Assembly: GCA_964247055.1 (NCBI GenBank)
Contig: OZ176057.1
Coordinates: 2,542,001 to 2,606,000, forward strand
Source: Paragordius varius
Taxonomy: Eukaryota > Animalia > Nematomorpha
DNA: 64,000 bases
Direction of reading: 5' to 3'
Positions 12,050 to 53,603 of the stretch are shown here, one piece after another (within the stretch, counting starts at the first letter, position 1; each line of letters opens with the position of its first letter). Both the position numbers and the translations under genes were made by a program. The notes under the pieces are model-generated. The model was not told the origin of the DNA. It did no database searches and was given only the letters and a program-made list of their open reading frames with translations.

Positions 12050-13708
12050 ATGCTAATAATTCAAATTATAAGAAAATTTTCAATTTTACCTTCGCAACAG
12101 TCTTTCCCCACTATTTACCCAATCTATGATTATTGTATTCATCATTTATTGGAGCCACGGATAAAATATAAGAAGTTGATGACTGATTATGACGCTATTT
12201 CATTAAGCGCAAAGTTACGCCATGAACACGGGATGCCAGAAAGCGCTCATTGTATTACGCCCCAAATTTTAGGAGAATATTTTAAACCTATTATCGCTCT
12301 TGAATATGAAGCCGCTGAAATGAAATATCGGAGGTTAAAAAATAAATTTAAATATATAACGTCACCTAATCAACATATTATAGACCAACATGCCGCTCTT
12401 CAACGATTAAAGACATCTAAAATGTCCCTAATAAATTGCGTTTTGCAATTTCCAAACACACTTATGCGGGATTTTGGCTGTGATTTATTATCTATCAAAG
12501 TTGTTAGTAATAATAATTTTCAAAGTTCTTCCAAAATTCTTAATTCACATATTTTACAAGCTACAAACTTAATAACTAATCTTGAATATGGTCACTCGGA
12601 ATACCAACAAATCTTATTGGAAGATGAAATTTACAATTATTTATGCAATCAAAAAATGGGAACTGACGAAACAAATATCACCCCAACCTCGAACCTACAT
12701 GTAATGACCCTACCCGATTGGGTCAAAATGCCAATAATTGAGGGATGTGGGCTGGCTAATTATAGTTCCGATGTTGCTAATAATCATTTGCTACCAGTTA
12801 CTGACAATCAAGATTTTTTAAAAACTGACACAGAAGGATGGAATGAAGCCAAAAAGCTATTCACCATCAATAAAAATACCCTCTGTTTAAATCCTAACCC
12901 GTTAAGTGTATATGCCGCATATTTTACTAAAATGTCAAGTCAAATAAATGATCCCGAAAATGGGGTTAATAAGGCACCAAAACTCAAATGGGTTGATCAA
13001 GGGTTTTTTACTGTAGCCAATTTATACCGTAATTATCACGTAGCTGAATTATACAGCGATTATAATACTCAAAATTATAGCCAGGATTTAAATCTCCTCC
13101 GTTTACATAAATATTTGAAAGAGAATGGTATTGAGATTGGTTCCGCTAGAATACCATATCAAACGAGGAGTGCCACCTTATTTGTCGCATGTCACAATTA
13201 CGAATCTTCACGAATAAGTTTTCAAAACTCAATTAACATCATTACGGGTCTTTATAAACACTTGGGTGTTTCATCGTCCGATTTTCAGCTTGTAGAAGCT
13301 CCCTTGGCTGAATATGAATTAGCAGACGCTTATAGAATAAATATTCAGGTAGGGGTATCGCTTCAGACAATTAAAATGGCTTTCATCGATAATGCAAGTA
13401 GATGGCCTCACGACCATAATTTAGACACGATGTTATCGGACAAAGACACAAAAATATATGTGAATCTCGGTTATCTGGCATATGTCGGTGATTATGTCAG
13501 CCAAAGATTAGCTATGCTAGGAAAATATTGCATTGATGAAGAGGACATTAATGACAAAAGCAACGCGCTTAATGCTCCTAATAAAATTAGCAAATCAAAT
13601 GTCGCAATTACACCTCAAAAGCATTTTTTCATCCATGGCATATATGGTGAAATATGTAATATACCCTTATTAACCAAAATTTTAAACGTTCGATCCAACA
13701 ATTTATAG
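12050..13708 (+). CDS. Slimp: SLIMP-like degenerate mitochondrial seryl-tRNA synthetase paralogue, intronless CDS, 552 aa
   Basis: Presequence-like N-terminus (MLIIQIIRKFS) followed by a coiled-coil region. Class II SerRS landmarks are recognisable but altered: LYRNYH (cf. LYRVHQ), LAYVGDYVSQRL (cf. ASNCTDYQSRRL), HGIYGEICNIPLL (cf. HTLNGTACAIPRL). Motif 2 FRxE and the motif 3 Arg are absent. Confidence 0.75.
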   Translation: MLIIQIIRKFSILPSQQSFPTIYPIYDYCIHHLLEPRIKYKKLMTDYDAISLSAKLRHEHGMPESAHCITPQILGEYFKPIIALEYEAAEMKYRRLKNKFKYITSPNQHIIDQHAALQRLKTSKMSLINCVLQFPNTLMRDFGCDLLSIKVVSNNNFQSSSKILNSHILQATNLITNLEYGHSEYQQILLEDEIYNYLCNQKMGTDETNITPTSNLHVMTLPDWVKMPIIEGCGLANYSSDVANNHLLPVTDNQDFLKTDTEGWNEAKKLFTINKNTLCLNPNPLSVYAAYFTKMSSQINDPENGVNKAPKLKWVDQGFFTVANLYRNYHVAELYSDYNTQNYSQDLNLLRLHKYLKENGIEIGSARIPYQTRSATLFVACHNYESSRISFQNSINIITGLYKHLGVSSSDFQLVEAPLAEYELADAYRINIQVGVSLQTIKMAFIDNASRWPHDHNLDTMLSDKDTKIYVNLGYLAYVGDYVSQRLAMLGKYCIDEEDINDKSNALNAPNKISKSNVAITPQKHFFIHGIYGEICNIPLLTKILNVRSNNL

Positions 13709-13802: not shown

Positions 13803-15307
13803 TTATGCAAAGTATGCATAAAATTCTTTGGCCAAATTAAGCGTCTTAAAGCGTAAGAGATATGTTGTTGGGCTTGGTTCACCGGCAATGACTATCATTA
13901 CACTATTCTTTCCTAAAATATATATTTATGTAAAATATTAAAACAAAATAATCAAATTTTCTAATACTTATAAATAAGCAAACAAAAAATAACCTTCGGT
14001 AAGGGTTACAGGTGTTTTCGCTTTAGCTACTATACTATTTAAGATGACAGTTCCAGAAGCATTTGCGGCCCGTATCAAAAGTTGGTATTTAGAGTCAACG
14101 GGCGTATTGATTATATTATCGTTTTCAGTGCTTTTTATGTAACAAAATCCAACTCCTATAAAAAGAAGATTAATATAATTAAGAGAAACAATAAATGTTT
14201 ATAAACCCGTATTTTAGAAAAAAATATTTATAAAATTTAACCATATTTTACGGATATTAATATAAAGTCGATTTCTCTTCCAATATTTAATGAATTTCTC
14301 TGGTTAAAACAAAATTTGAAACATTATATACCAAGTAAATAGGTTAAAAACCCCAAAAATATGGTTGTTAAAATATTTTTAGTTACCTATATCTTTAAAA
14401 GCGGATTGTTCCTTTCGGTAAAGTTTACATTTATTGACCCATAAACAATTTGATTCCTGGAATTGAGGTTCATCTGCATCATTGGTTGTCATGACAACCA
14501 TATTATCGCCCGCAGACGATTCCACTTCATCCTTTTCATCATTGTTCTCGTCAGAATTTGTAATCACAGGATTATTTTTGGGCGTTTGGGGTGTAAACGA
14601 AAATTGAAATTTTGATAAACTATTATCATTATTGTATGAACCAGCCTTCAAATTTGGTTTTGAATCTGTAGATATGGGTTTAAACGAAAATGTTTGTAAT
14701 GGAGTTGATATAGCAATCGAACATTGATTATTTAACAAATTTTGGGTATTTGTATTATCTTGCGAATGATGCGTTATATTAACATGTTTAGGAGAGGTAT
14801 GAAAACCATTTATACCTGATAAGGTAAATGGTTTAAATTCCAAAGATTTTGTTTTAGTTTCAATCTGTAAATCTAGTTTTAATTGATTATTTTGTTGGCT
14901 GTAATCATTAAATATGGGCGTAAGATCACATTGCGGATTAACATCCAAAACTTTATTTACCCAATTAACAAACATTTTGTTAAGATGTGAAAGTGAGGCA
15001 AGATAATAAATTTCAATGTCTTTTTGAGATTCAAAATATGTGTCCTTTACTAATTTACCATTAATATAAATGCGTTTGTTATCAGGTTCGGGTTTTATCT
15101 TACTAATAGGTGTGCTTTTATTTACAGGGGTGTTTGGGCCACTACTCAAACGCTTTGCTTTTATTATTTTCCGCTTTGATATGTCCTCCGTTGAATCATT
15201 AAAATTTTGTTCAATATCTAATGTTATCACATAATACCTTCCTCGGAACTAATTTCATCCCAATTATCTTTGGTTTTTTGAGTTAGCGCTCTACGTTTAG
15301 CTGACAT
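13803..15307 (-). CDS. NUP50: Nucleoporin Nup50, 390 aa. Exons 15307-15238, 15217-14387, 14155-13994, 13912-13803
   Basis: N-terminus MSAKRRALTQKTKDNWDE...KRKIIKAKR; conserved FVNWVNKVLDVNPQCDLTPIFNDY; C-terminal Ran-binding domain (KCKLYRK...DIG^GVGFCYIK...YQLLIRAANASGTVILN...G^KNSVMI...YLLRFKT). All introns are GT-AG and phase 1 (20, 231 and 81 nt). Confidence 0.93.
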
Positions 15308-24200: not shown

Positions 24201-25318
24201 ACAAATATATTTTTTAATTTTTTGAATAACCTACAGTTTTTCATGGCAAAATAATGGAATAGAGATTTGGTTAAAAACCAAATTTAAATTATATATACCA
24301 TTTATACCTCCGATTTACCCTTGAACAATTCAAATCAATTTAACCCTAAATAAATTATATGTTTTTGGGCTAATATAACTAATTATTAATATAAATATTT
24401 TTTTATGGATTTTTATCTGTATTAAGTTGACAATGAAGTTATATTTTTTTAAAAAAATCTAAAAATATATGATGTGTAATTTTCAAAACATACAATTTAT
24501 TCAAGGGTGAAATGGAAATGTTCAAGGGTAAATTTGAGGTGCGAATGGTATCTAAAAAATGAGCAGACTTAAAAATTGGCTATATATAAAACAGATCTAT
24601 AATTTTTACATTTTATTGCATTATAACTTTAATTATTACAGAATACGTTTATAGTAGAGGTATATTTTGCTAAAATGTTATTAATTATTGCCAAATATAT
24701 TCTGGTCTAATAATAGAGTAAAAGTGAAAAAAATAACTAAAAGCCAATAATACTGCCCTTTGTTGTATATGTTCTTTGGCCATAATAATTACCAACTTTC
24801 TAGCAATGTATATTTTACTCATATACTGTATATTATAAAATATTGTAATCAAAGGCTGTTAGTAAAAATATTTTTATCAATCAAAAATGCTGGTAACTAA
24901 TTGGTTCTAATAAAATTTCTGTGCACATAAAATATACTCGAATAGTCATTCGAATCATGCGTAAAATTTTGCTCAGCACATTTCACAAACCCATAAATGC
25001 CTTCATTAGAATCTTGACACGTGGAAGGACAGTCACCATTTTCGCGAAAACAACTGGCTTAAATATTGTGTTAGATTAGTAAAATTCATTTTTACAATTA
25101 TAAGTATTTCATATATGAAAGCCTTTTCTATAGCCAAGTTTGGATTTGAAAAAAATTAATGGATTATTTAGTTTTACTTTTTAAAGGGCAGAATGCCTCA
25201 TCACTGGAATCGAAACAATCAATTTTGCTGTCACATAATTTTTCCACCGATAAACATTGCGTTGAATTGGTATTTAGGTTAGATGGACATGTAAAATATC
25301 CCACGTTATCTGGACACG
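21275..25318 (-). CDS. Single-pass receptor-like protein: LDLa module + Cys-rich segment + Ig-like motif + TM helix + short tail. Exons 25318-25178, 25057-24938, 24146-23899, 23336-23063, 22353-22006, 21468-21275; 5' end further upstream
   Basis: Exon 25318-25178 encodes CPDNVGYFTCPSN...CLSVEKLCDSKIDCFDSSDEAFC, a canonical LDL receptor class A module. YQGVYSCV resembles the Ig DxGxYxC motif. TM segment TLIITIFVWVFGFLTIAMTIAFFLLYAKYR. All junctions are GT-AG and phase-compatible (1,1,0,1,1). Confidence 0.78.
22505..22798. mobile_element. Tc1/mariner-type MITE family B (~290 bp)
   Basis: TA|CAGTAAAAAT...ATTTTTACTG|TA with long TIRs containing CGGACAAAACGTAAAA. Confidence 0.78.
24298..24548. 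mobile_element. Foldback MITE family A copy (in an intron)
   Basis: TA|CCATTT...GAATGG|TA with the same internal spacer (taaattatatgtttttgggctaatataact). Confidence 0.75.
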
Positions 25319-25747
25319 CTAAATTTTGAAAATTAAAATACGAAAAAAAATATTTAAAAGAGATCTTTTGTATTCAATAAATAATTGCACGCATAGAGAA
25401 TATTTTGGTATTTGTGAAAACTGGGAGTAGTCGATAAAGGAAAAATGAAATAAACCGTTAAGCTCTGTATGAAATATCATTTAATTTAAACAAATATTTA
25501 ATAATATTTACATTAAACCAAGAAACACATTGAACTTTAAATTATATATATATATATATTTCAGTTTTATATAATATTTGAAAAAAGGGACAATAAAATG
25601 ATCAACATATGTGGATTATTTCGAAACATTATTTAATAGCTATGATCTCATAGGAATTATAATACGGTGCATTCATACATTGATTGTTTACTTGAGGGAA
25701 AAATAGATTTAAAAAAATATTTATACGTATGATAGAAACTCCTTACT

Positions 25748-29662: not shown

Positions 29663-32600
29663 TTATCGATTATGTTGCGTGATTCGTTGTCGGAGTTCGT
29701 TTAAAACTTTAGATTCCTCCCTGGGGTCCAAAATATCAGCTGATCGCCCTAAATCATTTCCGCCATCAACAATTCCATGGTGGTGTTCCTTATATTGAAT
29801 GACAGGTAAATTTGGTGGAACTGCCTTAGTAGGAAATGCAGATGGTATATTAATTTTGTCAGCTGTGACACCCAACCCTAAACCGGTTGGGTCATAATCA
29901 TATGTTTTGGGAACTGGGCCAAGACCGGCTTGTTTAAATTGAAAAGCATCTGTTCTTTGACGATCTTCAATTTCACGGAGAATGGATGCGTTATTCATAC
30001 CTAAAGTATAGATAAAAATATTTTTTAAACAAAAATTAAAAACACCTTAATATATTTTAAAATTGTTTTTTGTAAATAAAAATATCTTTAAAACAAATTT
30101 ATGATCGTGAGCTCTAATATAAAAAATCCATTTTTTGACCTATTTGGCGCAATATTTTTGAACAGTATAAATACTCATTTCATACTTCGTACCATATTTT
30201 ATCAAAAAATTACTAAAAATACTAACAAAAAAATTGTTAGGAATATTATATATTTATTAATTTTATATGCAGATTTTAAAATAATGTATATACAAAAAAC
30301 TGTGTTTTATTAATCAATTTTTACTTATAATATCCATAAAATGATTTAAACAAGAAACACCCCTTTTGTTTGATTTCTTTTTTCGATAAATAATAAAATA
30401 AACCATGAAGCCCTGAAACAATATAACCAGCAAGAAATCTTGAACACAATCATAAAAAACTAAGAAAAAATATTTGTTCAAATAAATTTTTTGTATAAGA
30501 TGAGTTTTGACAATGAACGAGTAACAATGATGGTTAAAATAAACACAATAGTTTAGACAGTCTCTTTTAAAATCTAATAAAATATTTTTGTTAATTCCCA
30601 CAAAATATTTAGCGAATCCGTCGATTTTTTAATCTAAAAATGCGACCCGCAAAGCTATTTGTGTTTAACACCCCTGTTTTAGAGTATATTCTTTCAAAAC
30701 TATCGAATTAATATTTAGGTAATTTAATTATATATAAATACTATAAAACATGAATAAACCATTCATAAACGATATTTTAGTGTTTACATCCAATTATAAT
30801 TTCTGAAATCAACACCATCTTCTTGTTATAAATAAATTAAAGAAAAATCATTATGCATGGCTAGTCGTAAGCAATTTTCTGGCAAAAAATTTTCAGGAAA
30901 AAGTAATTATAATTTTACATGTTTAAAATAAACCCAATCTAATTTATATTTGACAAATGTAATTATAAAACAACTGACAAATGGATATTATTCAATTAAA
31001 CTATGATTATGGGTCACAAACATACCTTTTTTCAACCATACACAACACTTACTTTTTGAATTATTAGACATATTTAAAAATTATTTTTTAGTATTTGAAA
31101 GTTTGATATTCCTATATAACGCTTAAACATTCAATTTGATTTTCTTAATTTGATTAGCTTTAGGAGTGTTGAATTAAATAAACCCAGTTGTTTGTCTGGT
31201 AAACTTTAAAATCTTGAATTATTAAAATAAAAAAAATTGAGAAAATACAGTTAAAACTGAAATTATACGGATAAAATGTAAAAATATAAAGACAATTTCA
31301 ACCATACTTTCATAAATTTACCTTATTTTTCACAAATAAATTATTTAATTACAATCGTAAAATATATAATTGATTGTATTACCAATATCCTTGTGTAATT
31401 CATACATAAAAATTCTAAACAGTAAGTTATAAGTCAAAAAATCAAGATTTAAAAAATATATGTAATTTTTTCGAAAAATATTTGTCTTTATATATTAACG
31501 TTTTTTATAATTCCAATTTTTACCTGCATTATAATTTATAAATGCATTTATCAAACAAATTCAATGCAATATGCTATAAAAACAAATTTTTTTGTGACAT
31601 TAAAGAAAAATGTTAAATTTAATTGGCAAAATTGTTGCGTGTTTGGTTAAAAAAGATTTTTTAATTTAGAGATTGGAACCGGTTCCCTTAACTTTTTGAC
31701 GAAAAATATTGGCTGTAAGTATTAATTCACAAAATATTAGTACACACTTTATAAAATCGACATAGTAATCACACAATGCAACTTTTTCTCGTAAAATCAT
31801 AAAAATCAGTTAGTTTGATTTAATTTTGAATAAGATTGATAGGAAAATTAACCATAATAATGTTTAACATATGTTTGAAAAAAATTGTCAAAAAATGATT
31901 AAAAAGATGGGTCAAAAAAAGTTAAATAAAAAAACTGTTAAAAAAGAAAAATAGACCCGTTTTTGGAAAAATAGTTGTGGTTCCAAAACGATTCCAAATC
32001 CAATCCCTGGTTTAAATCACAATCAAAGAAAAAGATTTTAAAAGCCAAAAAATTGATAACTTTATTTAAAATTTATACTCTCTTTAAAACTCATTTTCGA
32101 CGAAGTTTTTCCTTTTGATTCAGTCATGGTATGTTTAATTTTTCTTTCAATACCAAAGTAAGTCCGGACCCCTGGAATACGGAGAAATCCAACTTGTAAA
32201 AGACTAAGGAAATTGTTGCAACACCAATAACATAAAATGGCCTATAAAATTGAAAATATATACAACGGACAAAACGTAACAATATAAAGATAAATATTTT
32301 TTTCTCCAAGATACTACCATACTTTTTAAATCAGGATTTTTTTAATATATATTATTACTGATTGTTTTAAATTCCAAATTACAAAATAGACATGTATGTT
32401 TGTACCATAATCAATTACATGTATTTTACGATTGTTATTAAATGATGTTTATAGGACAAATAATGTTTAAAAAACTATGGTTGTCATTTAAAAAAAAATT
32501 TTCTTTTCTCCGTATAATTTCATTTTTTACTAACTGTAAAAACCGCTTGAAATTAGATGAAAATATGTGTAGCTATATTGAAAAAGATTACCTTTTAAAA

Positions 32601-32702
32601 AGCTAATATAATTTTAAAAATATAGTCATTATTACATAAAATCTAAAAGTATATGTCATTAGAAATAAAAAAAAACACTGTATTCCCAAAATCCTATCAA
32701 AT

Positions 32703-32745
<43 letters not shown>

Positions 32746-35688
32746 CTAGGTAAAAAATGGTAAAATCTAAAATAACTTAATAAACCGCTTGAAATTTGAA
32801 ACTAAAAATCAGGGCACCAATAGGCATTGCTCTAAGGAACCATTTTACATAAGGCGCCGCATTTGGTTGCATACCTTCAGTTCCAAGCTAAAACAAAAAA
32901 ATTAAAAATAAAAAAAATTAAAAATAGAAATTAAAAATATAAATTAAAAAAAATAAATAAATTTTTTCACACTCAAAATAAAAAATATGGAAAGAGGGTT
33001 AGTATAAGATTAAGAAACATTTGTTAGAAAATTATATATATTTTAACTTTGCCCTTTTTTCTGTGTAAAAATAGGGTGTAAAAAGAAAATATTTTGGGAC
33101 AACACATATAATGTTTCAAACATTATCTTTTCTTCAAACCAAAAATTATAGTTTTTGGAAAAAAAATTAATTTAAACATATATGATCTGACCTAAACTAA
33201 ATAAACTTATTGCAATTTTAAACATTTTTTAACATAAAATATGATGTTAGAGTAGACAAAGTTACGCATAAATGTTAAAATTATAAAAAAAGTTATTAAA
33301 ATATTTTTTATCTCATATATCCCATTTAGGTACACTTAAAACAAAATTATTAAATTAAAATAATTTAACCTAAAAAAAAATAAACCAAAACAATTTTATA
33401 CAATTTTTGTAAAAAAAAATAATGTATGGTTTAATTACATAATATATAAAATTGTCAAATTTTACGCTTTTTATTTTTTCAATTAAATTATCGCTTTTAA
33501 CTTTTTTCTCAAAACTCACAATTTAGACTAAACATTTTACTTTTTTCTTTTAATTTAAATTTATAAAACAAATTCTCAATGGAATTCAAAATACAATATT
33601 TCTAAAAGATACAACCATGTGAAAAATATGTAAAAAATAAACATGTTTGCTTTGAGGTTACTGTATATACCATTTATAATTTAAATTCACGCTTGAACAA
33701 TTCCTAGTTCACCCTCAAACAATTCAAATTACCCCTAAAAATAAATTATGTGTTTTCGAGCTAATATAACTCATCATTAATATACCATTTGCAGTTCAAA
33801 TTTACCCTTAAACAATTCAAATTCACCTTTAAAATTTATATTCATCCTCGAACAATTCAAATTCACCCTCAAATAAATAACATGTTTTTAAGATTAAAAA
33901 ATACCTATATTTTACAATATTTTTTAAAACAATATTGAAAAATAATAAATTATGCCATAAAGATATAATTTGTATTAATACTATATTAGTTCGAAAACAC
34001 ATAATTTATTTATAGGGTAAATTTAAATTGTTCGAGGGTGAATTTGAATTGTTCAAGGGTGAATTTGAATTGTTCAAAGGTGAATTTAAATTGTTCGAGG
34101 GTGAATTTCAAGTGTAAATAGTATATCTTAATACACTCAATACAGTATAGAGCACTTTTTAAGACCATATATCAGTATTTTAAATAACTAAAATACAAAT
34201 TAATTTAAATGTCATTAAAATGACATTTTTTCATTTTTATAATTAAAATCATTTTGAAAAAAAATGTGTGGAAAAAAATTGTTGAGTAATAAATAAGTAT
34301 GTAGCTACTAATATAAAACCTAAGGATCTTATAAAGAAAATTATAAAATGAATGATTTGGTTGCACATTATGCCTTTAAATGCAAACATAAAATAAATTA
34401 GGATACGAAGTTAAAAGGATATGCAAAAAAAATATTAAAGGAAACTTTTTATATAGACAAAGAACAAAAAATTATGAATAGAAAGAAAGATCTTAACAAT
34501 ATAAATAACATTACAAACTTAAATATATTTACTTTATACTTTATATATTAGTTTATATTTTAATTTTTACGTTTGACAAAGATTACTTGTAGAATCAAAA
34601 CGCTCAATAAATTCACTTAATTTTAGCTAAATTATCATTCAAATAACAATTTAGCCATTTTATACAATTAACTTTTTTTGTCTTATATACCATTTACAGT
34701 TCAAATTTACCCTTGAACAATTCTAATTCACCTTTAAACAATTCAAATTCACCTTAAAAATAAATTATGTGTTATCGAACTAATATAACTCATTATTAAT
34801 ATGAAATATATGTTTATGGTATAGTTTATTATTTTTTTAGTATTATTTTAATTTAAAACAAAATTTTTATTTTTGAAAAATATATAAAATATAGGTAATT
34901 TTTAATTTTAAAAAACATGTATTTTATTTGCGGGTGAATTTGAATTGTTCAAGAATGAATTAGGAGTTATTCAATAATAAATTTTGAATTGTTCAAGGGT
35001 GAATTTGAATTGTTCAAAAGTAAATTTTAGTTGTTGCTTAAGGGTAAATTTTAATTATTGTTCCAGAATGAATTAGGAATTGTTCAAGGGTAAATTAGGA
35101 ATCGTTCAAGGGCAAAATAAACATTGTTAAAAGGGTGAATTATAATTGTTCAAGGGTGAATTAGAAATCGTTAAAGAGTGAATTAGGAATTGTTCAAGGG
35201 CAAATTAATAATTGTTCAAAGGTATATCATTCGTATAATATCATCAAAAAAAAATTATTTAACTTAGGAGGTATACTTACTTCAATCGTAAAAAACAGCG
35301 TTGCAGCCGTAATAATTGGCAAGGCATAATAAGGATCAGGTATTGTAAGATCTGGGAACCATAAAATCCCTCCGTTTTTCATACTTTCTATGGGGGCTTG
35401 GGCCATGGCCCTCAAACCAAAAAACATGGAAATAAATACGGGCGCCTATTGATTTATTCATATTCATTAATTCCAAACATATATAATGGTAAAAAATAAT
35501 TTTTTATAGTGTTGATTGAAAAAAAAATTGAAAATTTCAAGTAAAAAAATGTGAAATTATACGGACAAAATGTAAAAATATAAGAAAAACTGAAATTTTC
35601 AAAAGACAACCAACCATACTTTTTAAATCTTGATTTATTTGAATATAACTAACTTATTGTTTAAAATGGTAAAGTGTGAAATAGAGAG

Positions 35689-35730
<42 letters not shown>

Positions 35731-38700
35731 TACTAACACAATCAATTCTATATTTTACAATTGTAAGTCAAATAACTTATATGAGTAATACTAAGGGTTT
35801 AAAAAGCATGGTTGATTGTCTTTTAGATAAAAATATTTGTCTTTATATTTTTACGTTTTGTCCGTATAATTTCATTTTTTACTGTATAAATAAAAATTGT
35901 AAAATTTTGGCAAAAATTAAGTAAAACTGAATGAAATTTATGGAAACGATATATATAGAAATAAATATTAGAGCTTTAAAATAAATTGCAGTAAAAAATT
36001 TTTTGATTAATTAATAATTTTGGAAAGTTGTTAAAATACATGGAAAAAATGGAAAATGTATATTTTGCATTATAGGCTATTGGATTGTTATAGTTTTATA
36101 CTAAAGTTTATAAAATTTAAGTGTAAACATACCATTGACAGTTATAATTCGCCTTTAAACAATTCTGATACACCCTCAAACAATTCACCAAAATAAATTA
36201 TGTGTTTTACAAGATTAGAATTACCTATATTTTTTATATCTAAAAAATTTCTTTTAATTAATATAATACTGAAAAAATGATAAACTATGCCATAAAAATA
36301 TATTTATTATTTGATGAGTTATATGAGCAGCCCGAAAACACATAATTTTTTAGGGTGAATATTTATTGTTGAAGGATAATTTGAATTTATTAGGGTAAAT
36401 TTAAATTGTTAAAGGGTGAATTTGAATTGTAAATGGTAAATTATAGAGTATGGAGAAAATTTAAAAAAAATAATTTATAACGGAATTTATTATAAAATTA
36501 ATGATATGTTAATAAAATATTTCCTTTGTTTATATATTAAAGTTTTTATTAAAGACATTCGATTATAACTTAATTAAGTCTAACGTACGATTTCTAAAAC
36601 ATGGCATTACTATTAAAATTAATAAATGTTTTTTTATTTAATACTAACAATACAATTCTTACAACTTATAATTACTTTTACCACTTTCTGAAAGTTATAA
36701 CTGTTTAAATATTTCTACAAATAAGGCGGTGAAAGGGCGAACTATCAATATTTGTTAAGTATGCAAAAAAATATATATTTTTCTTATTAATAATGTCAAA
36801 AAATTATATATTTAGAGAAACCACTTTAAATTAAATTTTAGCCTTGAAACATAAAAATTCAATCAAATCGGCATTCAAAATGATGATTCATTTCTTAGAT
36901 ATTAATTTATACAATTTTTTAAAAAAATTTCCAACCACATTATAATTTATAAATACTTTGCATAAATAATATATTACCCGCTCCAATTTATTGAAAAATA
37001 TAATTTTAGAAACATATATATATATATATATGATTGTTTTAAGAAAAAAAACCAATTTTATACTTGTAGTAAAGGCATTAACATAGATCTAATGGGTCTG
37101 ATATCGTGTTGCTGAAAAAGTTTTTTCATTAACAAACTGTTGCGTAAAACTAAATATATAAATACAAATTTATATTTCTTTTTATAAAACATATATAATA
37201 CAAAAAGGAATATATTTTTTTGGGGGGAAAAGGAAATATTTTATTTTAAATTAATATTATATTTTTGCGCAAAAATATTTTTTTTGGTGAAAAAAAAACT
37301 GTGAATTATGGTACAGTTTTTTAAATTAGAAACAAATCAATCATCTCCTACATAAACACGCAAAAAACACATAATGTCTATATATTATAAATTTATATTC
37401 AAAATTTTAACGAAAACACAGTATAAAAATTTATGAAAATCAAACCCCCCTTGAACAATTCAAATTCACCCTTAAGCAATTTGAATTCCCCCTTAAACAA
37501 TTTAAATTCCCCCTTAAACAATTTAAATTTACCCTAAAACTAATAAAGTGTTTTTTGAAATTAAATATTTCATATATTTATATTGTTTCTAAAAATTGAG
37601 ATTTCGTTTGTAATCAAAATAATACTAGGAAAAATAATAAACTAAGCCATAAAAATATATATTACCATATTATAATAATGAGTTATATTAGTGCCCGGAA
37701 AACACATAATTTATTTTTTAGGGTGAATTTAAATTCTAAATGATACAAATTTGAATTTTTTGATTTTTTTTGTTGTAAAAAAATTAAACCAATTGAAGAA
37801 TTAATATTTTTACTTTCTTTGTAATCGCCTTCCTGACGAGCCGACATAACTGCCATCTGATATTTTTGGATTTGTGGCATATAATTGGCCATTTTTATAC
37901 TGTTTCTTTGATTTTTTATCATAAGTGGGAATAGGAGGAATCGTATACAACAAGTTGCTAGTTTTAAAGAGAATATGATCGAGTTTTTTATTTTCATAAA
38001 AAAGAATTCAGACATTAGTGTAAAATTATAAATAGATTTAGTTTGAAATTGCTATTTTAATGAAATTGCTTTAATATTTAATCATATGTGGAAATAGACA
38101 TATTAGTAAAAAGGTTGCTTAATTTATATAGGTTAGATTTTAAAATTAACAAAAATTAATAACAATAAAGTATAATCTATAAGAAAAAATATAAATTAGA
38201 GAGATAGATTAAAAGGTAAAAACTAATTTATTTTTTGTAGAGATACCCATATTTTTTAAAATCAAATATGTAAATTAGTATACAGTTGATAACATATTTT
38301 GTAATTGTAATGATATTTTAAATAAAAAAAGATATGGGTTTTCCTTGATAAAAATAAATGTATTTTACGTATTTTAAATTTTATATCATTAAAATACCGT
38401 ATGTATATTTATATTATATATACTTGCAATTATACTGCCCCACCAAGGTAAACCCCAAACATGAAAATTTTCTATGATTGTTTCAACTAGACCTGCTGGA
38501 GTGTTGTGACCCAAATTATAACTGCTTAAAGCTGGTTCTCCAAGAGCATTTAAAGGGATATTTAATATCGGTTCAATAATTTTATTGGTATTACCAGTTA
38601 AATTTGCGGATAAATCTGCCAAACTAATTTTTGAAGTGGTTATAGTGTCTGAAACATTAGAAAGACTGTCAAATATTTGGCCAGGCTTAGCGTTATTTGC

Positions 38701-38862
38701 TATGGAATTGGCAGAATTTACCAACTAAATGCTCATTAAAAATATATATTACTGTTTCTGATAAATTGGATATTCCTCTAACTATATAAACTAAACAAAA
38801 TTCCCTAATAAGATGAAAAATGTCATAAACCTTTGAAAAACTTTTGCACCTAGTCGAAGCAT
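29663..38862 (-). CDS. OXA1L: Mitochondrial inner-membrane insertase OXA1L (YidC/Oxa1 family), 460 aa. Exons 38862-38831, 38804-38753, 38724-38424, 37957-37814, 37149-37064, 35445-35281, 32887-32786, 32241-32079, 30000-29663
   Basis: Motifs: GLPWWGSIIATTCCIRFLLFPLMIK, PLLQ^APVFISMFFGLRAMA...GGILWFPDLTIPDPYYALP, LRAMP, AILCYWCCNNFLSLLQVGFLRIP, GPVPKTYDYDP. Nine exons total 1383 nt in frame; all introns are GT-AG. The first two exons are less certain than the core. Confidence 0.92.
32701..32742. repeat. (TA)n microsatellite. Others at ~6796-6815, ~29597-29616, ~35691-35730, ~37014-37030 and ~53663-53692
   Basis: Direct reading of the sequence. Confidence 0.9.
33670..34121. mobile_element. Foldback MITE family A copy with a duplicated left arm (OXA1L intron)
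   Basis: Two TATACCATTT starts (33670 and ~33784) and arrays of 21-bp units on both arms. Confidence 0.75.
34330..34620 (+). mobile_element. Penelope-like element remnant (GIY-YIG C-terminus and 3' flank)
   Basis: ILKETFYIDKEQKIMNRKKDLNNI resembles the RxxxESxYI...MNxKxD end of Penelope GIY-YIG endonucleases. It shares its 3' sequence with 41760-42000. Confidence 0.5.
34690..35223. mobile_element. Foldback MITE family A copy with an expanded right-arm 21-bp array
   Basis: TA|CCATTTACAG start and more than 10 degenerate GAATTGTTCAAGGGTGAATTT units at ~34930-35223. Confidence 0.75.
36132..36436. mobile_element. Foldback MITE family A copy (OXA1L intron). Further copies at ~80-306, ~37443-37745, 42313-43793 (split) and ~44604-44790 (left arm only)
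   Basis: TA|CCATTG...AAATGG|TA with the family's 21-bp units. Confidence 0.7.
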
Positions 38863-41639
38863 GGGTTTAGCTCATTTAAAATAACATCTGTTTAATCTGT
38901 TTAACTGATGAAGTATATTTACTTAGCGTTTGATTTAAGGGTATTAAAATTGAACATCGTTATAATCATTAAAATGCAGGTATTTGGCTAGTACTAATTA
39001 TCCTAAAATTAGATAGTAACGACTTCGAAAATTAACAGTTTATTACTTCTTATTTTAAAGAACGTAAGTTTTTACCTCATAGGAAATAATTGATTTATAT
39101 GTCCCTTACAAAATATATAATTTAGATAGATTCTTTATAAAAAATAATAGATGCGTCTTAAAGAATAAATTCATAAATTTAACCCATAACATCGGTTTTA
39201 ATATTTTATTTGAATTTTCTTTTAATATGCATCAGTGCATAAAATCGGGTAATATTTCGATGAAGTCTACATGTTACTGTAGAAAGCATCATAATTTTAG
39301 GAGTCTAATTATAACCCTTAAGTGTCATTTAACATTGGATACAAGACATTTATTTCAGTCCCTGGATATTGGAGTAGTTGATGCCCGGCTTGTAAAAATA
39401 TTTCAAAAAATTTGGAAAATATTAAGATGACATAAGGTTGAACTTATATAACATTAATGAACCGAAATATAAAATAATTCATTCTAAAATACTCGATATT
39501 ACTTATTCAGAGGTAAACCCCAAAGGTAATAATTTAGCCATGACATGTGAGAATAAGCTAAATATATAGTGTTATAGGTGATTTTTATATAAATAAACTT
39601 AATTTAGTCTTAATATTAACTATAAGATAAAACACACTCATTTAATTCAAATTGGGGTAGTTGGATACCACAGGCCTGTTTACTATCAAATACTTTAAAA
39701 GGTATGGAAGGAATCGAAACCATGGCAAACTTTTGCACTTATATAACTTTAATAAACCAAAATATATAAAAAAATTTATTCAAAAATACTTGATATTACT
39801 TATTTTAAGCTAAAATCCAAATGTAAAAATTTTGTCAATGTGACATGTGTCAAAATGTAAAATTAAAAAAAATACAAAATAAACCGCTTTTTTATTTTTC
39901 TCAATGTTCGATGTAATTCATATTAAAAATTAGCTTTGGTTTTACCCTTAAAATTAAATGAAGTCGATATTCTGCAAAAATTTTGTAAAATAAAAATGGC
40001 GTCGAAGTAGTTTGAGATGAAACTTTTTTTCATAATAAAATTTAACAATATATTTTGGCATATTTATATAATTTTTATCAGGATAGACGCATAATTTAAA
40101 ATTCGGACCAATTTAAATTTAGTCTGGGGTAATTTAGATAACCCAATTTGAATCGAAGTGTTAAATATACACTTAGCAAAAATGTTGTAAAAAATGGCGT
40201 AGTTTGGTACGAAACTTTTTTTTCCAAGTACGAATTTTATTTAGATATTGTGACTTATTTCTATAAATATTAGGACAGTAGCATAAATTTAAATGCAACC
40301 GTTTCTTTCAGTAGTTTTAAAAATGTCAAACAAAATATTGTCTGAATATCTAGATAGCCCAATTAGAATCGAAAATGCCATATTTTTCGTGCACTATCAA
40401 GAATCGCGAATTTCGCTAAAGCATAACATTAGAACTAAATAAATATATTTTTATTTGGGCCCAACTCAATGGACGCCTCGAAAATGGAATGGCTGTTTTG
40501 ATGGTATAAAATATCATATGCTGTTACATATGAAAAATTTTTTACCAAATTTTTTGAAAAAAACGGTCTATTAATTTTATAAATAAGATAAGATTTATAA
40601 GCGAAAATAATATAAAATTTTTATAAAATATGCTGAAATTATGTTTAAATATAAATCCACCAGGATTCTCATGGTAGAGTTTTAAGCAGAAATTATGATG
40701 AAGCCTATCTCATCGTTGGTTATTCGATGAATCGTGGACACGCTATTATAAATTTTATAAGAAATATGCTTATCATTTATATTAGTAAAGAATTAAAAAA
40801 ACATTTTTCCTTTTCAAATATACAGTAAAAATTGAAATTATGCTGACAAAAGGTGAAAACATAAAGATAAATAATTATTTCTAAAAAACAACCATACTTT
40901 TTAAATTTGGATATGAAATATAACTCATTGTTCAAAAATGTGAAGCATGAAATAAAGATATATATTGGTAACACATTCAATTATATATTTAATATTGTTA
41001 ATAAATATTTTATATGGGAAAAATTTAGATATAATAAAAGTTTGATAGTCTTTTAGAAAACAATATTTATCTTTATATTTTTACTTTTTGTCCGTATAAT
41101 TTCAGTTTTTATTTAGTTGTGTTTCTTCTAAAAAATCTCTTTAATTTTGAACTCGAACGGATGTTATAATTCTGTGATGGAGATGATCAGCGTCAATAAA
41201 CTTTTTTAGAAAAATTGTTTTTATAATTTAATAAAGTGCTTTTATATTAAATCAACTTTATTTTAAAATAAAAAATAATACGCTTCAACAAAATTTTGTC
41301 AAAAATTCTATATTTGAAAAGTATGCTTTTTTCAAAAAATATTATTTTTAATGTCATAATGCAGCATATAATTAGGAATAATCTTATCATGTAATAACGG
41401 CAATTATGCTTTTTGTTGAAGTTAGCCAATTTAATTGAGGCCGAAAATGTAACCTTCCCAAATCCATAAATTTACACCCTATATAAATATTGTTTGCTCT
41501 AGTTAATAACATATTCAAATAATATTTTTTGAAATGAAACATTTATTTTTTATTAAAAAATCAATTAACATAAGGTGTGAGAAAATTAGTTATATAATTT
41601 GGTGAGTAATTACCATAAAAGTGGTCTAAATGTCGATTG

Positions 41640-44147: not shown

Positions 44148-46345
44148 TCATTGACTTAACATGTGATAGAGGTAAGCCCGCGGATTTTGGCCACCGTTAT
44201 AACCGTTGTGTTGATGATGGTGTGCTGTCCTATTTTTATACCGTATATTAGCGTAATATCCCATAACTAGGAAACAAAAAACGAAAATTGATGGGCACAA
44301 GGAACCCAAGATAATGTACAAGATTTGAAGTGTTGTGTTACGCTTATAGGGACGGATTGAGACATGAACTACGCATGAACTCAACAAAAATTTCTCCTCA
44401 ACTCCATCCGAATCGTAATCGCGTTGTTTGAAACAAAGAAACTTTCCAGAATCTTCGAGGGAAACGTTTGAAATATTAAGTGTAAGTCCATCAGACGAAA
44501 TATTTAACCTTGGTCGAACGGTTTGATCCAAAAACCGCCAATCAACCACTAATCCCTTGTGAGCTTTAATCTGTAATGCAAGCAACAAAAAGTACATTAA
44601 ATACCATTTACAATTCAAATTCACCTTCGAACAATTCAAATTTACCCTTAAAAATATTATATATTTTTTAAAGATTAAAATATACCTATATATTTATGTA
44701 TTTTTGAAAAATAATATTATGTTTAAAATAAATAAATATTGAAAAAATTATAAACTATGCCATCTAGATGTATTTCATATGAATAATGCGTTATATTAGT
44801 TAAAAAAGGTTGAATACGGTCAGGTATTATATTTTAACCATATATATTCTTCAAAAAGACTACTATTGTTAATAAAGTTGAGGATTTCATAACTTCGATT
44901 TCATTAACCCAATTCAAGTAAGCTAATAAATAGTTGATTATAGAAAAATGGTTAATTTAAAAGAACAGACTTATTCTTACTATTAAAGAACTAAAATTTT
45001 TTTATGGTGGGGGAATACTATTTACATCCAAAGTAGATGGTGTTTTTATCATCAAAATTATATATTCGCAAATTATATGAAAAAACATTTGAAAGTAATA
45101 ATAATCTTAAAAGTTAGTAATTTATTATTAAAGGTCGAGGAATTAAAGTTTATTAAAGAACTAAAAAACTTGGTCACCCCCCTTTTCCCAAGGACTGATA
45201 ATTTTTTCTAAATTTGACATAATCGCTTAGATAGTGTTACAAACCCAACCTTAACTATTCTAAACCATAGATTTTTATAATAAAGTATGCATATTAATGT
45301 TGGTCAATTCAATTATTTTAGGCTAATTTGCAATACAGTAGCGTATGGTATATAACAAATTTTGTCCCCAAAATTATTTAAAATTTATATTGTAGGATAG
45401 GAAAGGTCCGTAATCTCAACCATATGTTGTTTTTTACCCATACGCTAGTATTTTGCCAATCGGCCAAAAATAATGTAAATTGACTAACATTAATGGGCAT
45501 ATCATATATAATAAGAGGGTATAAACTTGATTCTTCTGTAAAGTTTTGTAATTTTTAGTGGTATTTCTGGTTACAGAAATTCGATCTTTTTTAAAACTTT
45601 TCAGCTTACTAAGATATCTATCAAAGTAGGATGTTTTAGTCAAATTCATATATTTATTATTATTACTGTTATTATAATAATTTAATATGTAGTTTAAAAT
45701 GTGCATTTTCTTTTCCGACAAAGCTTTCAAACTATCAGACTTGTTTACAGGCAAAAATAAATGATTGTACAGAGTTTGTGCACTCATGGTTATATTTGCA
45801 TTTTGAAAGATTTTATCTGTTTGACAAGTGCAGGTGGCCGTATCACCCACAAAAGTAAATACATTATGCCGAGGACTAGATAATAAATAGGCATCGAAAC
45901 ATTCCGATTCCCAGGATTTCAGAGCATTTTCATTCAGGATTCCGTAGTCTTTAAATTTAACACCAACGCGAAATAATTTGTCACAATCAAGTGAAACCTG
46001 ACCACCGTTTGTCGCATTGCTCATAAAATAAGGAATAGGAGGGAATAAAATGGAATGATTTGAATTTGAAGTGGAATTACTAATTATTGTTGTTTGCAAA
46101 ACTATTTTGTCCGCATTGTATATCTTTGGAGTTTGGATATCGTCATGAGAATTATTTTGTGGTGTTTTATTTGCTCCTTGTTTTTGGGCGGGAAAAGGAA
46201 TTTTGGTTTCATTTAGGGCGACGATAAAGGGATTAGAAATTATCAATATCATCATTACATTTTTTATTACTTTATATCTGAGGATAGTATTTAAATGTGT
46301 GGTAAAAATTTTTGATTTATAACTAAAATATATACGGGTTAACAT
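44148..46345 (-). CDS. Ig-domain type I membrane protein. Exons ~46345-45500 and 44570-44148; internal structure unresolved
   Basis: Last exon (after a TTACAG acceptor): RLNISSDGLTLNISNVSLEDSGKFLC (Ig F-strand DSGxYxC), then TM LQILYIILGSLCPSIFVFCFLVMGYYA and a basic stop-transfer RYKNR. The upstream ORF has Cys-containing ectodomain sequence (GDTATCTC). Confidence 0.68.
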
Positions 46346-50234: not shown

Positions 50235-50675
50235 TCAAATTTTGTCTTTTATATTAAATGAAACTCCACATGAACACCCACTTTGTGCATTTGGATTATT
50301 TACAATGCGGAAAGCAGATCGAATTAACTCATCTTGATAATCCAAAGTTGAATTTTCTAAATACTGAAGCGAAAGTTCGTCTATTACAACTTTTGCACCT
50401 TGTTTTGTTATGACTCTAAAAATAAAAGTATATTGATAACATAAAATACTTGTCATCGGAATTAACGGAGGAATCAAGTTCAAATTTGTATTGGAAACCT
50501 GAGCAACCCCCACCATCAACAATGATGCGCAAAAATTTGCCCTGTTCTAATTCTAAAATTTTCTAATCTATAAACAAATTATAACTTTAATTGCGGTGTC
50601 TGATATATTGATGGTTGAAAGTTTGTTAACATAAGTTTTAACCAAATGGAATATAGAATTTTTGGAGAATATCAT
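50235..50675 (-). CDS. ISCA2: Iron-sulfur cluster assembly protein ISCA2, 127 aa. Exons 50675-50586, 50562-50450, 50415-50235
   Basis: Spliced product: INISDTAIK^[27 protein letters not shown]...DD^[17 protein letters not shown]...[25 protein letters not shown]. Contains the HesB-family GGGCSG and CSCG motifs; NNPxAQxGCSCG is ISCA2-like. Introns are 23 and 34 nt. Confidence 0.93.
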
Positions 50676-52603: not shown

Positions 52604-53603
52604 ACTAATTAAATCCATATACTCCAACTCCTACCTATCACTTAACACCCCGCATGGCCCAACCTCTTGGAGCCCAATGAACATAGGTCTGCGTCAAGGC
52701 TGCATTTTATCCCCCATGTTGTTCAACATATATTTGGAATGTATCATGAGGGATCTAAATCTGCCAGGAATAAAAGTAGGGGGTCACACTCTGACGACTC
52801 TCCACTACGCAGACGACACGGTTATCTTAGCAAATTCACAAACAAACCTCGAAAACAGTCTCCAAACTTTTATAAATGTGTGCAAAAAATACAATCTTAC
52901 ATTAAACCTCAACAAAACTAAAATTTTACATATCAACTCCCCTCATTCCTATGACTCGCTTCGGATTAATGGCGAAACAATTCAAGTAGTCAACGAATAC
53001 ACATACCTTGGAAGCATAATCAACAACTTAAGCTCCAGTTCCCAAGAAATAAGAAGACGCATAGCTATCGCCAAATGCGCTCTATCCTCACACTACAAAT
53101 TATGGAAATCTCATGACATAACCCTTAAAACAAAAATCCGACTAGTAAATGCATTAATCTTTCCTATCATGTTATACGGGTGTGAAAGCTGGACTATCAA
53201 AAGTGAAGACGAAAAAAGAATAAACGCGTTTGAAATGTTTTGCTGGAGAAAGATACTTGGTATAACATGGAAGGACAAAATAAAGAATATCGACATTGTA
53301 AATAAAATTAACGCACAAACAACGCTTCGGGGTAAAATAATAAAACAAAAATTCGGTTACTTTGGACACATTATTCGGGGCAATTCTTTGGAAAAGGATA
53401 TTATGTTAGGAAAAGTAAATGGTAAGAGAGGAAGAGGCCGCAGACGTATTCGCTGGGTAGACGAAATCTTATCACTTTCCAAATTGTCACTGCAAAAACT
53501 ATCTCAAAAAGGTCACGACAGAACCGAATGGAGGAAGTTTTCCTACAAAATCGCTAATGGTCGATAACCGACTACAAGCTCAACAACAACAACAACAACA
53601 ACA
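52604..53603 (+). mobile_element. 5'-truncated RTE-clade non-LTR retrotransposon with an uninterrupted RT C-terminal frame and an (AAC)n tail
   Basis: IGLRQGCILSPMLFN, LHYADD, YTYLG, MLYGCESWT, FEMFCWRKIL, GHIIR...EKDIMLGK..G.RGRGR..RW. The frame extends upstream to ~52604 (LIKSIYSN...TPHGPT). The (AAC) tail at 53581-53603 follows the stop. Confidence 0.92.

What the first reader, a model, noticed from the sequence alone, without database searches (positions are those of the whole stretch)
29663..38862. OXA1L mixes 26- and 28-nt introns with six 0.47-2.4 kb introns
The 5' end resolves to ATG 38862 through introns 38830-38805 (26 nt) and 38752-38725 (28 nt), giving the presequence-like MLRLGAKVFQREFCLVYIVRGIS. 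The downstream introns are 466, 664, 1618, 2393, 544 and 2078 nt. One spliceosome would have to handle both ~25-nt and kilobase introns in the same pre-mRNA. Lineages known for tiny introns mostly have uniformly tiny ones, so this bimodality could point to an undescribed splicing regime or a modified or reduced spliceosome.
Basis: partly seen in the sequence, partly recalled or inferred. Interest (0 to 1): 0.8.

Follow-up and report, generated by a model that had tools for sequence, protein, structure and literature searches.

The report
OXA1L gene: tiny 5' introns unproven
This is an ordinary, intact mitochondrial insertase gene (OXA1L) with six confirmed long introns. The two 26- and 28-base introns proposed at its start are the best single reading but unproven, although neighbouring genes in the same window do carry real introns of 20-34 bases.

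Summary
Collinearity with full-length homologues confirms them.

The large exon 38724-38424 has no in-frame ATG and begins right after a TAG, so an upstream coding exon is needed. It is not unique:
- 26+22 nt is also possible.
- Single introns of 72-165 nt from the same ATG also work.
- Other upstream ATGs are possible.

The 52-nt middle exon looks non-coding by codon usage. I put the exact model at about 0.3-0.35. No close relative of the N-terminus was found.

Tiny introns are real in this window:
- ISCA2 has introns of 23 and 34 nt.
- Nup50 has a 20-nt intron beside ordinary ones of 81 and 231 nt.

Splice signals look the same in both size classes, and nothing points to an altered spliceosome. 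Parasitic flatworms already show 5'-proximal mini-introns together with long introns.

This scan has flagged the same tiny-intron class many times in other windows of this genome, so this locus is one of the weaker examples.

The parts
38831..38862 (-). Candidate first coding exon, starting at ATG 38862 (peptide begins MLRLGAKVFQ)
   Evidence: GC is 37.5%, against 17-22% in the introns. Codon log-likelihood is +2.4 bits, reached by 2% of open intronic windows. The peptide is basic and looks like a presequence. The mini-model gives this start a posterior of 0.44-0.72. Inferred, with no RNA.
38805..38830 (-). Candidate 26-nt GT-AG intron, phase 2
   Evidence: The donor scores 7.1 bits (top 4% of intronic GTs). 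The acceptor scores 8.2 bits (top 0.5% of intronic AGs). Model posterior is 0.16-0.53. Unproven.
38753..38804 (-). Candidate 52-nt middle exon (EFCLVYIVRGISNLSET)
   Evidence: It is open in the required frame. GC is 25% and codon log-likelihood is -3.9 bits. That is lower than any 17-codon window of the verified OXA1L exons, and only 1% of coding windows score as low. This is the weakest part of the model.
38725..38752 (-). Candidate 28-nt GT-AG intron, phase 0
   Evidence: The donor scores 6.1 bits, but the acceptor scores -1.8 bits, which is poor. The rival is a 22-nt intron at 38721-38700. Model posterior is 0.19-0.43.
38424..38724 (-). Exon A: N-terminal region up to the start of the first transmembrane helix (ends ...GLPWWGSIIA)
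   Evidence: It is an open frame of 101 codons with no Met, and a TAG lies immediately upstream. It aligns to human OXA1L 107-146 and gave 65 homologue hits. Its first 8 codons are coding-like, at +2.7 bits.
37958..38423 (-). Intron of 466 nt, GT-AG, phase 1
   Evidence: Many homologue fragments break at the same point after PWWG.I.A/G. Collinearity is shown.
37814..37957 (-). Exon B (first transmembrane helix and following loop)
   Evidence: Pfam 60KD_IMP positions 7-47; tblastn collinearity.
37150..37813 (-). Intron of 664 nt
   Evidence: GT-AG ends and frame.
37064..37149 (-). Exon C
   Evidence: Gap-free match to P0042 and P0060.
35446..37063 (-). Intron of 1618 nt, carrying 20-22-nt satellite arrays
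35281..35445 (-). Exon D, the most conserved exon
   Evidence: 50-60% identity to homologues, E down to 5e-19.
32888..35280 (-). Intron of 2393 nt, carrying satellite arrays
32786..32887 (-). Exon E
   Evidence: Aligns to P0060 residues 299-330.
32242..32785 (-). Intron of 544 nt, with donor GTTTAT
32079..32241 (-). Exon F
30001..32078 (-). Intron of 2078 nt
   Evidence: The junction reads ...FKES|MNNAS..., matching P0060 ...FKESYSNMKAS.
29663..30000 (-). Exon G, with the stop codon at 29663-29665
50563..50585 (-). Comparator: verified 23-nt intron in ISCA2
   Evidence: The two flanks lie in different frames. They map to residues 5-15 and 27-57 of one uninterrupted exon in L006.
50416..50449 (-). 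Comparator: verified 34-nt intron in ISCA2, phase 2
   Evidence: The flanks map contiguously to 2apn_A 32-59 and 62-114, and to P0067 52-91 and 93-137. L006 has an intron of about 94 nt at the same codon and phase.
15218..15237 (-). Comparator: 20-nt intron in Nup50, the gene's first intron
   Evidence: Pfam NUP50 positions 1-16 lie upstream and 32-60 downstream, in different frames. The same gene has ordinary introns at 14386-14156 (231 nt) and 13993-13913 (81 nt).

Best explanation
This is an intact, ordinary OXA1L gene. OXA1L is the mitochondrial inner-membrane insertase of the Oxa1/YidC family.

Shown: seven main exons are joined by six long GT-AG introns.

Inferred:
- Translation most probably starts at ATG 38862, which gives a basic, presequence-like N-terminus (MLRLGAK...).
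- Under that reading, OXA1L follows the pattern of its neighbours Nup50 and ISCA2, with tiny introns at the 5' end and ordinary or kilobase introns downstream.
- Both size classes carry the same GT[A/T]...[T/A]TAG signals. They are most simply removed by one canonical U2-type spliceosome that pairs the two ends across the intron. No special machinery is needed.
For: Gene and long introns.

Need for an upstream exon: exon A has no Met and a TAG sits at 38727-38725.

First exon: it is coding-like in GC and in codon usage.

- With introns of 18-40 nt, only two parses exist within 400 nt, and both use ATG 38862 and the 26-nt intron.
- Donor scores are 7.1 and 6.1 bits, and the 26-nt intron's acceptor scores 8.2 bits (top 0.5% of intronic AGs).
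- Only 0.15% of random 117-nt intron fillers give a two-tiny-intron parse that scores as well.
- It is the best-scoring (Viterbi) parse of a mini splice model when tiny introns make up 27-50% of introns.

Tiny introns are verified in the same window, as first introns of Nup50 and ISCA2.

One machinery: published animals with ultra-short introns keep canonical U2 and U2AF (PMC13644364).
Against: - No RNA evidence was obtained. The listed RNA-type runs hold next to none of the gene's words.
- There is no homology support, because the region is a non-conserved presequence and no close relative was found.
- The 52-nt middle exon is intron-like, at -3.9 bits. That is below every 17-codon window of the real OXA1L exons.
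- The 28-nt intron's acceptor scores -1.8 bits.
- The posterior of the exact parse in the crude model is only about 0.1-0.28. The 26-nt intron alone gets 0.16-0.53.
- A path through two or fewer tiny introns exists by chance for 44-60% of random upstream sequences.
Confidence: 0.33

Rival explanations
1. The start is the same (ATG 38862), but one ordinary short intron joins it to exon A and OXA1L has no tiny introns. Candidate introns are 38841-38725 (117 nt, giving MLRLGAK|LVNS...), 38849-38700 (150 nt), or 38830-38666 (165 nt).
For: - All of these are GT-AG and in frame.
- The 117-nt version treats the intron-like 52-nt segment as intron. It keeps only the coding-like parts: the first 7 codons score +3.8 bits and the first 8 codons of exon A score +2.7 bits.
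- Its composition is typical of introns, with GC 23% and T 44%.
- Ordinary introns of 81 and 231 nt exist in this window.
- A random 117-nt intron gives a spurious tiny-intron path in 13-27% of trials.
Against: - The donor GTTTTT scores only 5.5 bits and the acceptor -1.8 bits.
- The 117-nt intron has a model posterior of 0.02-0.04.
- This reading leaves unexplained a very good donor and acceptor pair spaced exactly 26 nt apart.
Confidence: 0.2
2. The true first coding exon lies further upstream, between 38.9 and 41.4 kb or beyond. It is joined by an ordinary intron to the acceptor at 38725 or 38700, and ATG 38862 is a coincidence.
For: - Many in-frame ATG and donor combinations exist within 500 nt upstream.
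- The mini-model gives a total posterior of 0.28-0.56 to starts other than 38862.
- With few tiny introns assumed (10%), the best parse uses ATG 39328 with a 616-nt intron.
Against: - None of these first exons stands out. The 38862 exon is coding-like in both GC and codon usage, and it encodes a typical basic presequence start.
- Several of these parses discard the coding-like first 8 codons of exon A.
Confidence: 0.25
3. The start and the 26-nt intron are, but the frame is restored by a 22-nt intron at 38721-38700 rather than the 28-nt one.
For: It is the only other parse using introns of 18-40 nt. Its acceptor at 38700 scores 7.4 bits, against -1.8 bits for 38725. Model posterior is 0.09-0.26.
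Against: Its donor scores only 2.0 bits. It would read the AT-rich 28-mer as coding, which scores -4.5 bits. It would also discard 8 coding-like codons scoring +2.7 bits.
Confidence: 0.12
4. The tiny introns are recognised by a separate or altered splicing pathway, distinct from the one that removes the kilobase introns of the same transcript. Possibilities are a variant U1, loss of U2AF or SF1 dependence, or an SPF45-type factor.
For: - Introns of 20-28 nt are shorter than the spacing usually assumed between 5' splice site, branch point and 3' splice site.
- Here, 7 of 11 verified exons end in A rather than G before the GT.
Against: - Donor and acceptor motifs do not differ between the 3 tiny and 8 longer verified introns.
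- Myxozoans and Dicyema with 22-27-bp introns keep a canonical U2 and U2AF1/2.
- No snRNA gene lies in this window to examine.
Confidence: 0.07

Closest known systems
Ultra-short introns of myxobolid Myxozoa and Dicyema japonicum (PMC13644364, Mol Biol Evol 2026)
   Same: They are GT-AG spliceosomal introns under 30 bp in animals, in parasitic lineages, with reduced donor information (GTa). Gene finders tend to miss them.
   Different: In those lineages the tiny class is the norm (median 22-27 bp) in compact genomes. Here tiny introns sit beside introns of 81 nt to 2.4 kb in a repeat-rich genome, and the acceptors keep a clear [T/A]TAG. That paper does not mention the animal group this genome seems to belong to.
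Bimodal intron lengths of parasitic flatworms: Gyrodactylus salaris, with modes near 32 and 58 bp, and tapeworms (PMC4040987)
   Same: Mini-introns are concentrated at intron positions 1 and 2, with long introns (up to about 20 kb) further down the same genes. One spliceosome handles both classes.
   Different: The short mode there is about 32-37 bp, not 20-28. It is a different phylum. The flatworm result is genome-wide, whereas here it rests on a handful of genes per window.
OXA1L / Oxa1 / YidC insertase family (Pfam PF02096; human OXA1L in PDB 6zm5 and 9olf)
   Same: The conserved core is collinear. The intron after the PWWG motif sits where many animal homologue fragments also break. The N-terminus is basic and presequence-like.
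   Different: The core is ordinary. Only the joining of the first coding exon is uncertain.
Human ultra-short introns (about 43-65 nt) that depend on SPF45/RBM17 instead of U2AF.
   Same: It shows that short and long introns of one genome can use different early recognition factors.
   Different: Those introns are twice as long as the ones here. No factor inventory could be made from a single 64-kb window.

Membership tests
OXA1L / Oxa1-YidC insertase (PF02096) | 60KD_IMP core domain collinear with known members | tested here: met
   Exon B hits PF02096 positions 7-47 at E=1.2e-4, as a piece below the whole-protein cut-off. Exon A aligns to human OXA1L 107-146. Exons A-G align in order to P0060, P0042 and P0052.
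OXA1L / Oxa1-YidC insertase (PF02096) | N-terminal mitochondrial presequence | tested here: inconclusive
No predictor was available, and the exon joining is unresolved.
Spliceosomal tiny introns (under about 35 nt) - the two OXA1L candidates | GT-AG ends, and removal restores the reading frame | tested here: met
Spliceosomal tiny introns (under about 35 nt) - the two OXA1L candidates | Removal is required to keep a conserved protein collinear with homologues | tested here: not met
   The flanks are a non-conserved presequence. No homologue covers them, and in-frame alternatives without tiny introns exist.
Spliceosomal tiny introns (under about 35 nt) - the two OXA1L candidates | The spliced junction is seen in RNA | not testable with these tools
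RNA-type runs hold next to none of the gene's words.
Spliceosomal tiny introns (under about 35 nt) - the two OXA1L candidates | Flanking exons look coding | tested here: inconclusive
   The first exon and exon A are coding-like (+2.4 and +2.7 bits). The 52-nt middle exon is intron-like (-3.9 bits).
Spliceosomal tiny introns - ISCA2 and Nup50 comparators in this window | Removal is required for collinearity with homologues or solved structures | tested here: met
   ISCA2 34 nt. ISCA2 23 nt. Nup50 20 nt: where each half matches only weakly (E about 0.01).
Two-class (bimodal) intron regime of the flatworm type | The short class is concentrated at the first intron positions, with long introns downstream in the same genes | tested here: met
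   Nup50 has introns of 20 nt, then 231 and 81 nt. ISCA2 has 23 and 34 nt. OXA1L has its candidates first, then 0.47-2.4 kb. The sample is small, and no genome-wide histogram is possible from one window.
Modified or reduced spliceosome | Distinct splice signals for the tiny class, or missing core factors | tested here: not met
   Donor and acceptor motifs are the same in 3 tiny and 8 longer verified introns. A factor inventory is not testable from this window, and there are no Rfam hits.

The most novel reading that the evidence does not exclude
This animal is said by earlier scan notes to be a horsehair-worm relative, which I did not test. It would have a discrete class of 20-34-nt introns at gene 5' ends, recognised by an early splicing pathway of its own. 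That pathway would be distinct from the one removing kilobase introns in the same pre-mRNA, for example through a variant U1 or U2AF-independent recognition. OXA1L would be a transcript on which both pathways act.
Probability: 0.08. Interest if true: 0.85.

Novelty: new member of a known kind. Interest (0 to 1): 0.4.

Why it matters
Introns under 30 bases are published for only two animal lineages, both with compact genomes (PMC13644364). A third lineage that mixes them with kilobase introns would show that extreme intron shortening does not require genome compaction.

There is also a practical point. Gene finders and read aligners with minimum-intron settings will break such genes. That could inflate apparent gene loss in this group; for example, BUSCO completeness is 71.6% for Gordionus.

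The general point is already carried by better cases, both in this window (ISCA2, Nup50) and in other windows of this genome. OXA1L itself adds only a plausible, unproven example and no evidence about the splicing machinery.

Tried and rejected
1. RNA test. The look-up of sequencing runs listed four DNA-type holders, and five RNA-type runs with next to none of the gene's words. No reads were therefore seen.

2. Close relatives of the N-terminus.
- Word searches with exon A and with the last exon found nothing.
- The full HMMER search with exon A gave 65 hits. All were distant, at 32-59% identity over the conserved C-terminal part only.
- The contigs looked up (P0008, P0023, P0007) were short transcript or metagenome pieces of unrelated organisms.
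- The metagenome scan found nothing.

3. Open-frame bridging scan. I scanned the whole window for segments of 15-60 nt with GT-AG ends that bridge two open frames. It was too noisy to give a length histogram.

4. Models rejected.
- The 72-nt single intron (38796-38725): its donor scores -6.3 bits and its read-through scores -7.9 bits.
- Assembly frameshift: four in-frame stops lie between the ATG and exon A, so no single indel can explain the break.
- Start inside exon A: it contains no Met.

5. No snRNA or any other Rfam family lies in the window.

6. I did not search or fold the joined, spliced protein.
Full report
**The gene.** The window is AT-rich, with GC of 20-36% per 2 kb, and it carries animal genes. 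On the minus strand between 29663 and 38724, seven open-frame pieces encode an OXA1L-type insertase.
- Exon B hits Pfam 60KD_IMP.
- Exon A residues 62-100 align to residues 107-146 of human OXA1L from solved mitoribosome structures.
- Full-length homologues returned by the HMMER search (P0060, P0042, P0052, P0044, P0012, P0008) align in order through all seven pieces.
- The junction peptides match homologues without gaps. Many homologue fragments from other animals break at the same point after the PWWG motif.

**The 5' end: what the sequence shows.** Exon A (38724-38424) is open for 101 codons, contains no methionine, and is preceded directly by a TAG that doubles as a possible acceptor. A start codon must therefore come from upstream.

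It is a correct GT-AG, in-frame construction.

I enumerated all paths from any ATG within 400 nt, using up to two GT-AG introns of 18-40 nt. Only two exist, and both use ATG 38862 and the 26-nt intron. They close the frame with either the 28-nt intron or a 22-nt one at 38721-38700.

Once ordinary intron lengths are allowed, the solution is no longer unique.
- From the same ATG, single introns of 117 nt (38841-38725), 72, 150, 156 and 165 nt are in frame.
- A dozen more parses start at ATGs up to 500 nt further upstream.

**Is it more than chance?** The mere existence of a tiny-intron path is not. I placed random 400-nt non-coding pieces of this window upstream of the TAG and exon A. A path with two or fewer tiny introns appeared in 44-60% of trials. 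It also appeared in 13-27% of trials when a random 117-nt intron was placed between the same exons.

Quality measures pull in both directions.

- The 32-nt first exon is exon-like. Its GC is 37.5%, against 17-22% in the six introns, and its codon log-likelihood of +2.4 bits is reached by 2% of open intronic windows.
- I built position weight matrices from 11 introns of this window verified by homology. The two donors score 7.1 and 6.1 bits, and the acceptor of the 26-nt intron scores 8.2 bits, better than 99.5% of intronic AGs.
- Only 0.15% of random 117-nt fillers reach the parse's combined site and codon score.

- The 52-nt middle exon has GC of 25% and a codon score of -3.9 bits. That is lower than any 17-codon window in the verified OXA1L exons (minimum -2.0), and only 1% of coding windows score as low.
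- The acceptor at 38725 scores -1.8 bits, worse than most random AGs.

I then ran a crude forward/Viterbi splice model. It used site scores, codon scores, a two-class length prior, and every ATG up to 41400.
- Its posterior is only about 0.1-0.28.
- The marginal posteriors are 0.44-0.72 for start 38862, 0.16-0.53 for the 26-nt intron, 0.19-0.43 for the 28-nt intron, 0.09-0.26 for the 22-nt intron and 0.02-0.04 for the 117-nt intron.

These numbers rest on 11 training introns and guessed priors, so I treat them as rough. My overall odds are:

| Model | Probability |
|---|---|
| Exact reader model (26+28) | about 0.33 |
| 26+22 variant | 0.12 |
| Same ATG with one ordinary intron | 0.2 |
| Another upstream first exon | 0.25 |

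**Independent evidence that could not be had.**
- The RNA-type runs of the same species label hold next to none of the gene's words.
It was still counted, so no reads were seen. I kept those 36 places out of every later search call.
- No protein from this species or a close relative covers the N-terminus. Two word searches were blank. The exhaustive HMMER search gave only distant hits over the conserved end of exon A. A metagenome scan was blank.

**Tiny introns are real in this window.**

ISCA2, 34-nt segment (50449-50416):
- The piece upstream maps to residues 32-59 of the solved IscA-family protein 2apn_A, and the piece downstream maps to residues 62-114.
- The same pieces map to residues 52-91 and 93-137 of a full-length homologue, P0067.
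- Only the split codon lies between them.
- A metagenome contig (L006) has an intron of about 94 nt at the same codon and phase.

ISCA2, 23-nt segment (50585-50563):
- Its two flanks are in different frames.
- They map to residues 5-15 and 27-57 of one uninterrupted exon of L006.

Nup50:
- Pfam NUP50 positions 1-16 and 32-60 lie on either side of the 20-nt segment 15237-15218, in different frames.
- The same gene then has ordinary introns of 231 and 81 nt.

The window therefore shows tiny introns at gene 5' ends and ordinary ones downstream. That raises the prior for the OXA1L model but does not prove it.

**Mechanism.**
- Across the 11 verified introns, the tiny class (3) and the longer class (8) share donors of the form GT[A/T] followed by A/T.
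- They also share acceptors ending in [T/A]TAG.
- Seven of the 11 upstream exons end in A.

Nothing separates the classes, so the simplest reading is one canonical U2-type spliceosome pairing sites across the intron. No snRNA gene is in the window, so the machinery itself could not be examined.

**Comparison with the literature.**
- A 2026 survey of 51 animal genomes found introns under 30 bp only in myxobolid myxozoans and Dicyema japonicum. Donor and acceptor motifs were reduced, but U2 and U2AF1/2 were canonical (PMC13644364). It does not mention Nematomorpha.
Gyrodactylus salaris has modes near 32 and 58 bp. The short mode dominates intron positions 1 and 2, and 69% of introns exceed 100 bp, reaching about 20 kb. 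Tapeworms are also bimodal (PMC4040987).
- My searches found no paper reporting tiny introns in horsehair worms. The Gordionus genome preprint never uses the word intron, and it reports GC of 26.9% and BUSCO completeness of 71.6%.

**Earlier notes of this scan.** Many other windows of this same genome were flagged for introns of 20-35 nt beside ordinary ones. The notes often place them at gene starts and take the genome for a horsehair-worm relative. One note reports RNA showing such introns being removed in another gene. I used these only as leads. I tested the two that lie in my window (ISCA2, Nup50) and did not test the organism assignment.

**Verdict.** The gene and its long introns are real and ordinary. 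The two tiny introns at its start are the best single parse but unproven, at about one in three. The two-class intron system is real and, as far as I could find, unpublished for this animal group. It is already better shown elsewhere, and nothing here supports an altered spliceosome.

Noticed in passing
window 33795-33873, 34014-34115, 34696-34758, 34942-35224, 36344-36442, 37448-37540: One satellite family with a period of 20-22 nt (unit like AGGGTGAATTTAAATTGTTCA) occurs as short arrays in both orientations. It lies inside three different OXA1L introns.
   Followed up: no
window 25319-25341 (minus strand), next to 25167-25316: A 23-nt GT-AG segment has open frames of 46 and 50 codons on its two sides. 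It sits directly upstream of an exon encoding an LDL-receptor class A domain (Pfam E=1.2e-6). It may be another 5' tiny intron after a signal-peptide exon.
   Followed up: partly
window 52677-53567 (plus strand): A 296-aa open frame carries the C-terminal half of a reverse-transcriptase domain (RVT_1, E=6e-19). It is a truncated non-LTR retrotransposon copy.
   Followed up: partly
window 58794-63899, 3119-5440, 12050-13708, 45434-46345: Four very long single-exon open frames (1701, 773, 552 and 303 aa) are rich in Asn and Ser and have no Pfam match. The neighbouring 44148-44639 encodes an Ig I-set-like piece.
   Followed up: partly
11 verified introns of the window (OXA1L, Nup50, ISCA2): The last exon base before the GT is A in 7 of 11 cases and G in 4. 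This fits an earlier scan note about a U1 gene with a changed base at the position that reads it (note s1-326614).
   Followed up: partly
L006 4560-5260 (JGI metagenome contig Ga0210040_10003068): An unidentified eukaryote in a metagenome has an ISCA2 gene 64-65% identical to this one. It has an intron of about 94 nt at the codon where this genome has 34 nt, and no intron where this genome has 23 nt. It also has a separate presequence exon upstream.
   Followed up: partly
   Followed up: no
window 38874-38876 (minus strand): A two-codon upstream open frame (ATG AGC TAA) lies 14 nt before ATG 38862.
   Followed up: no
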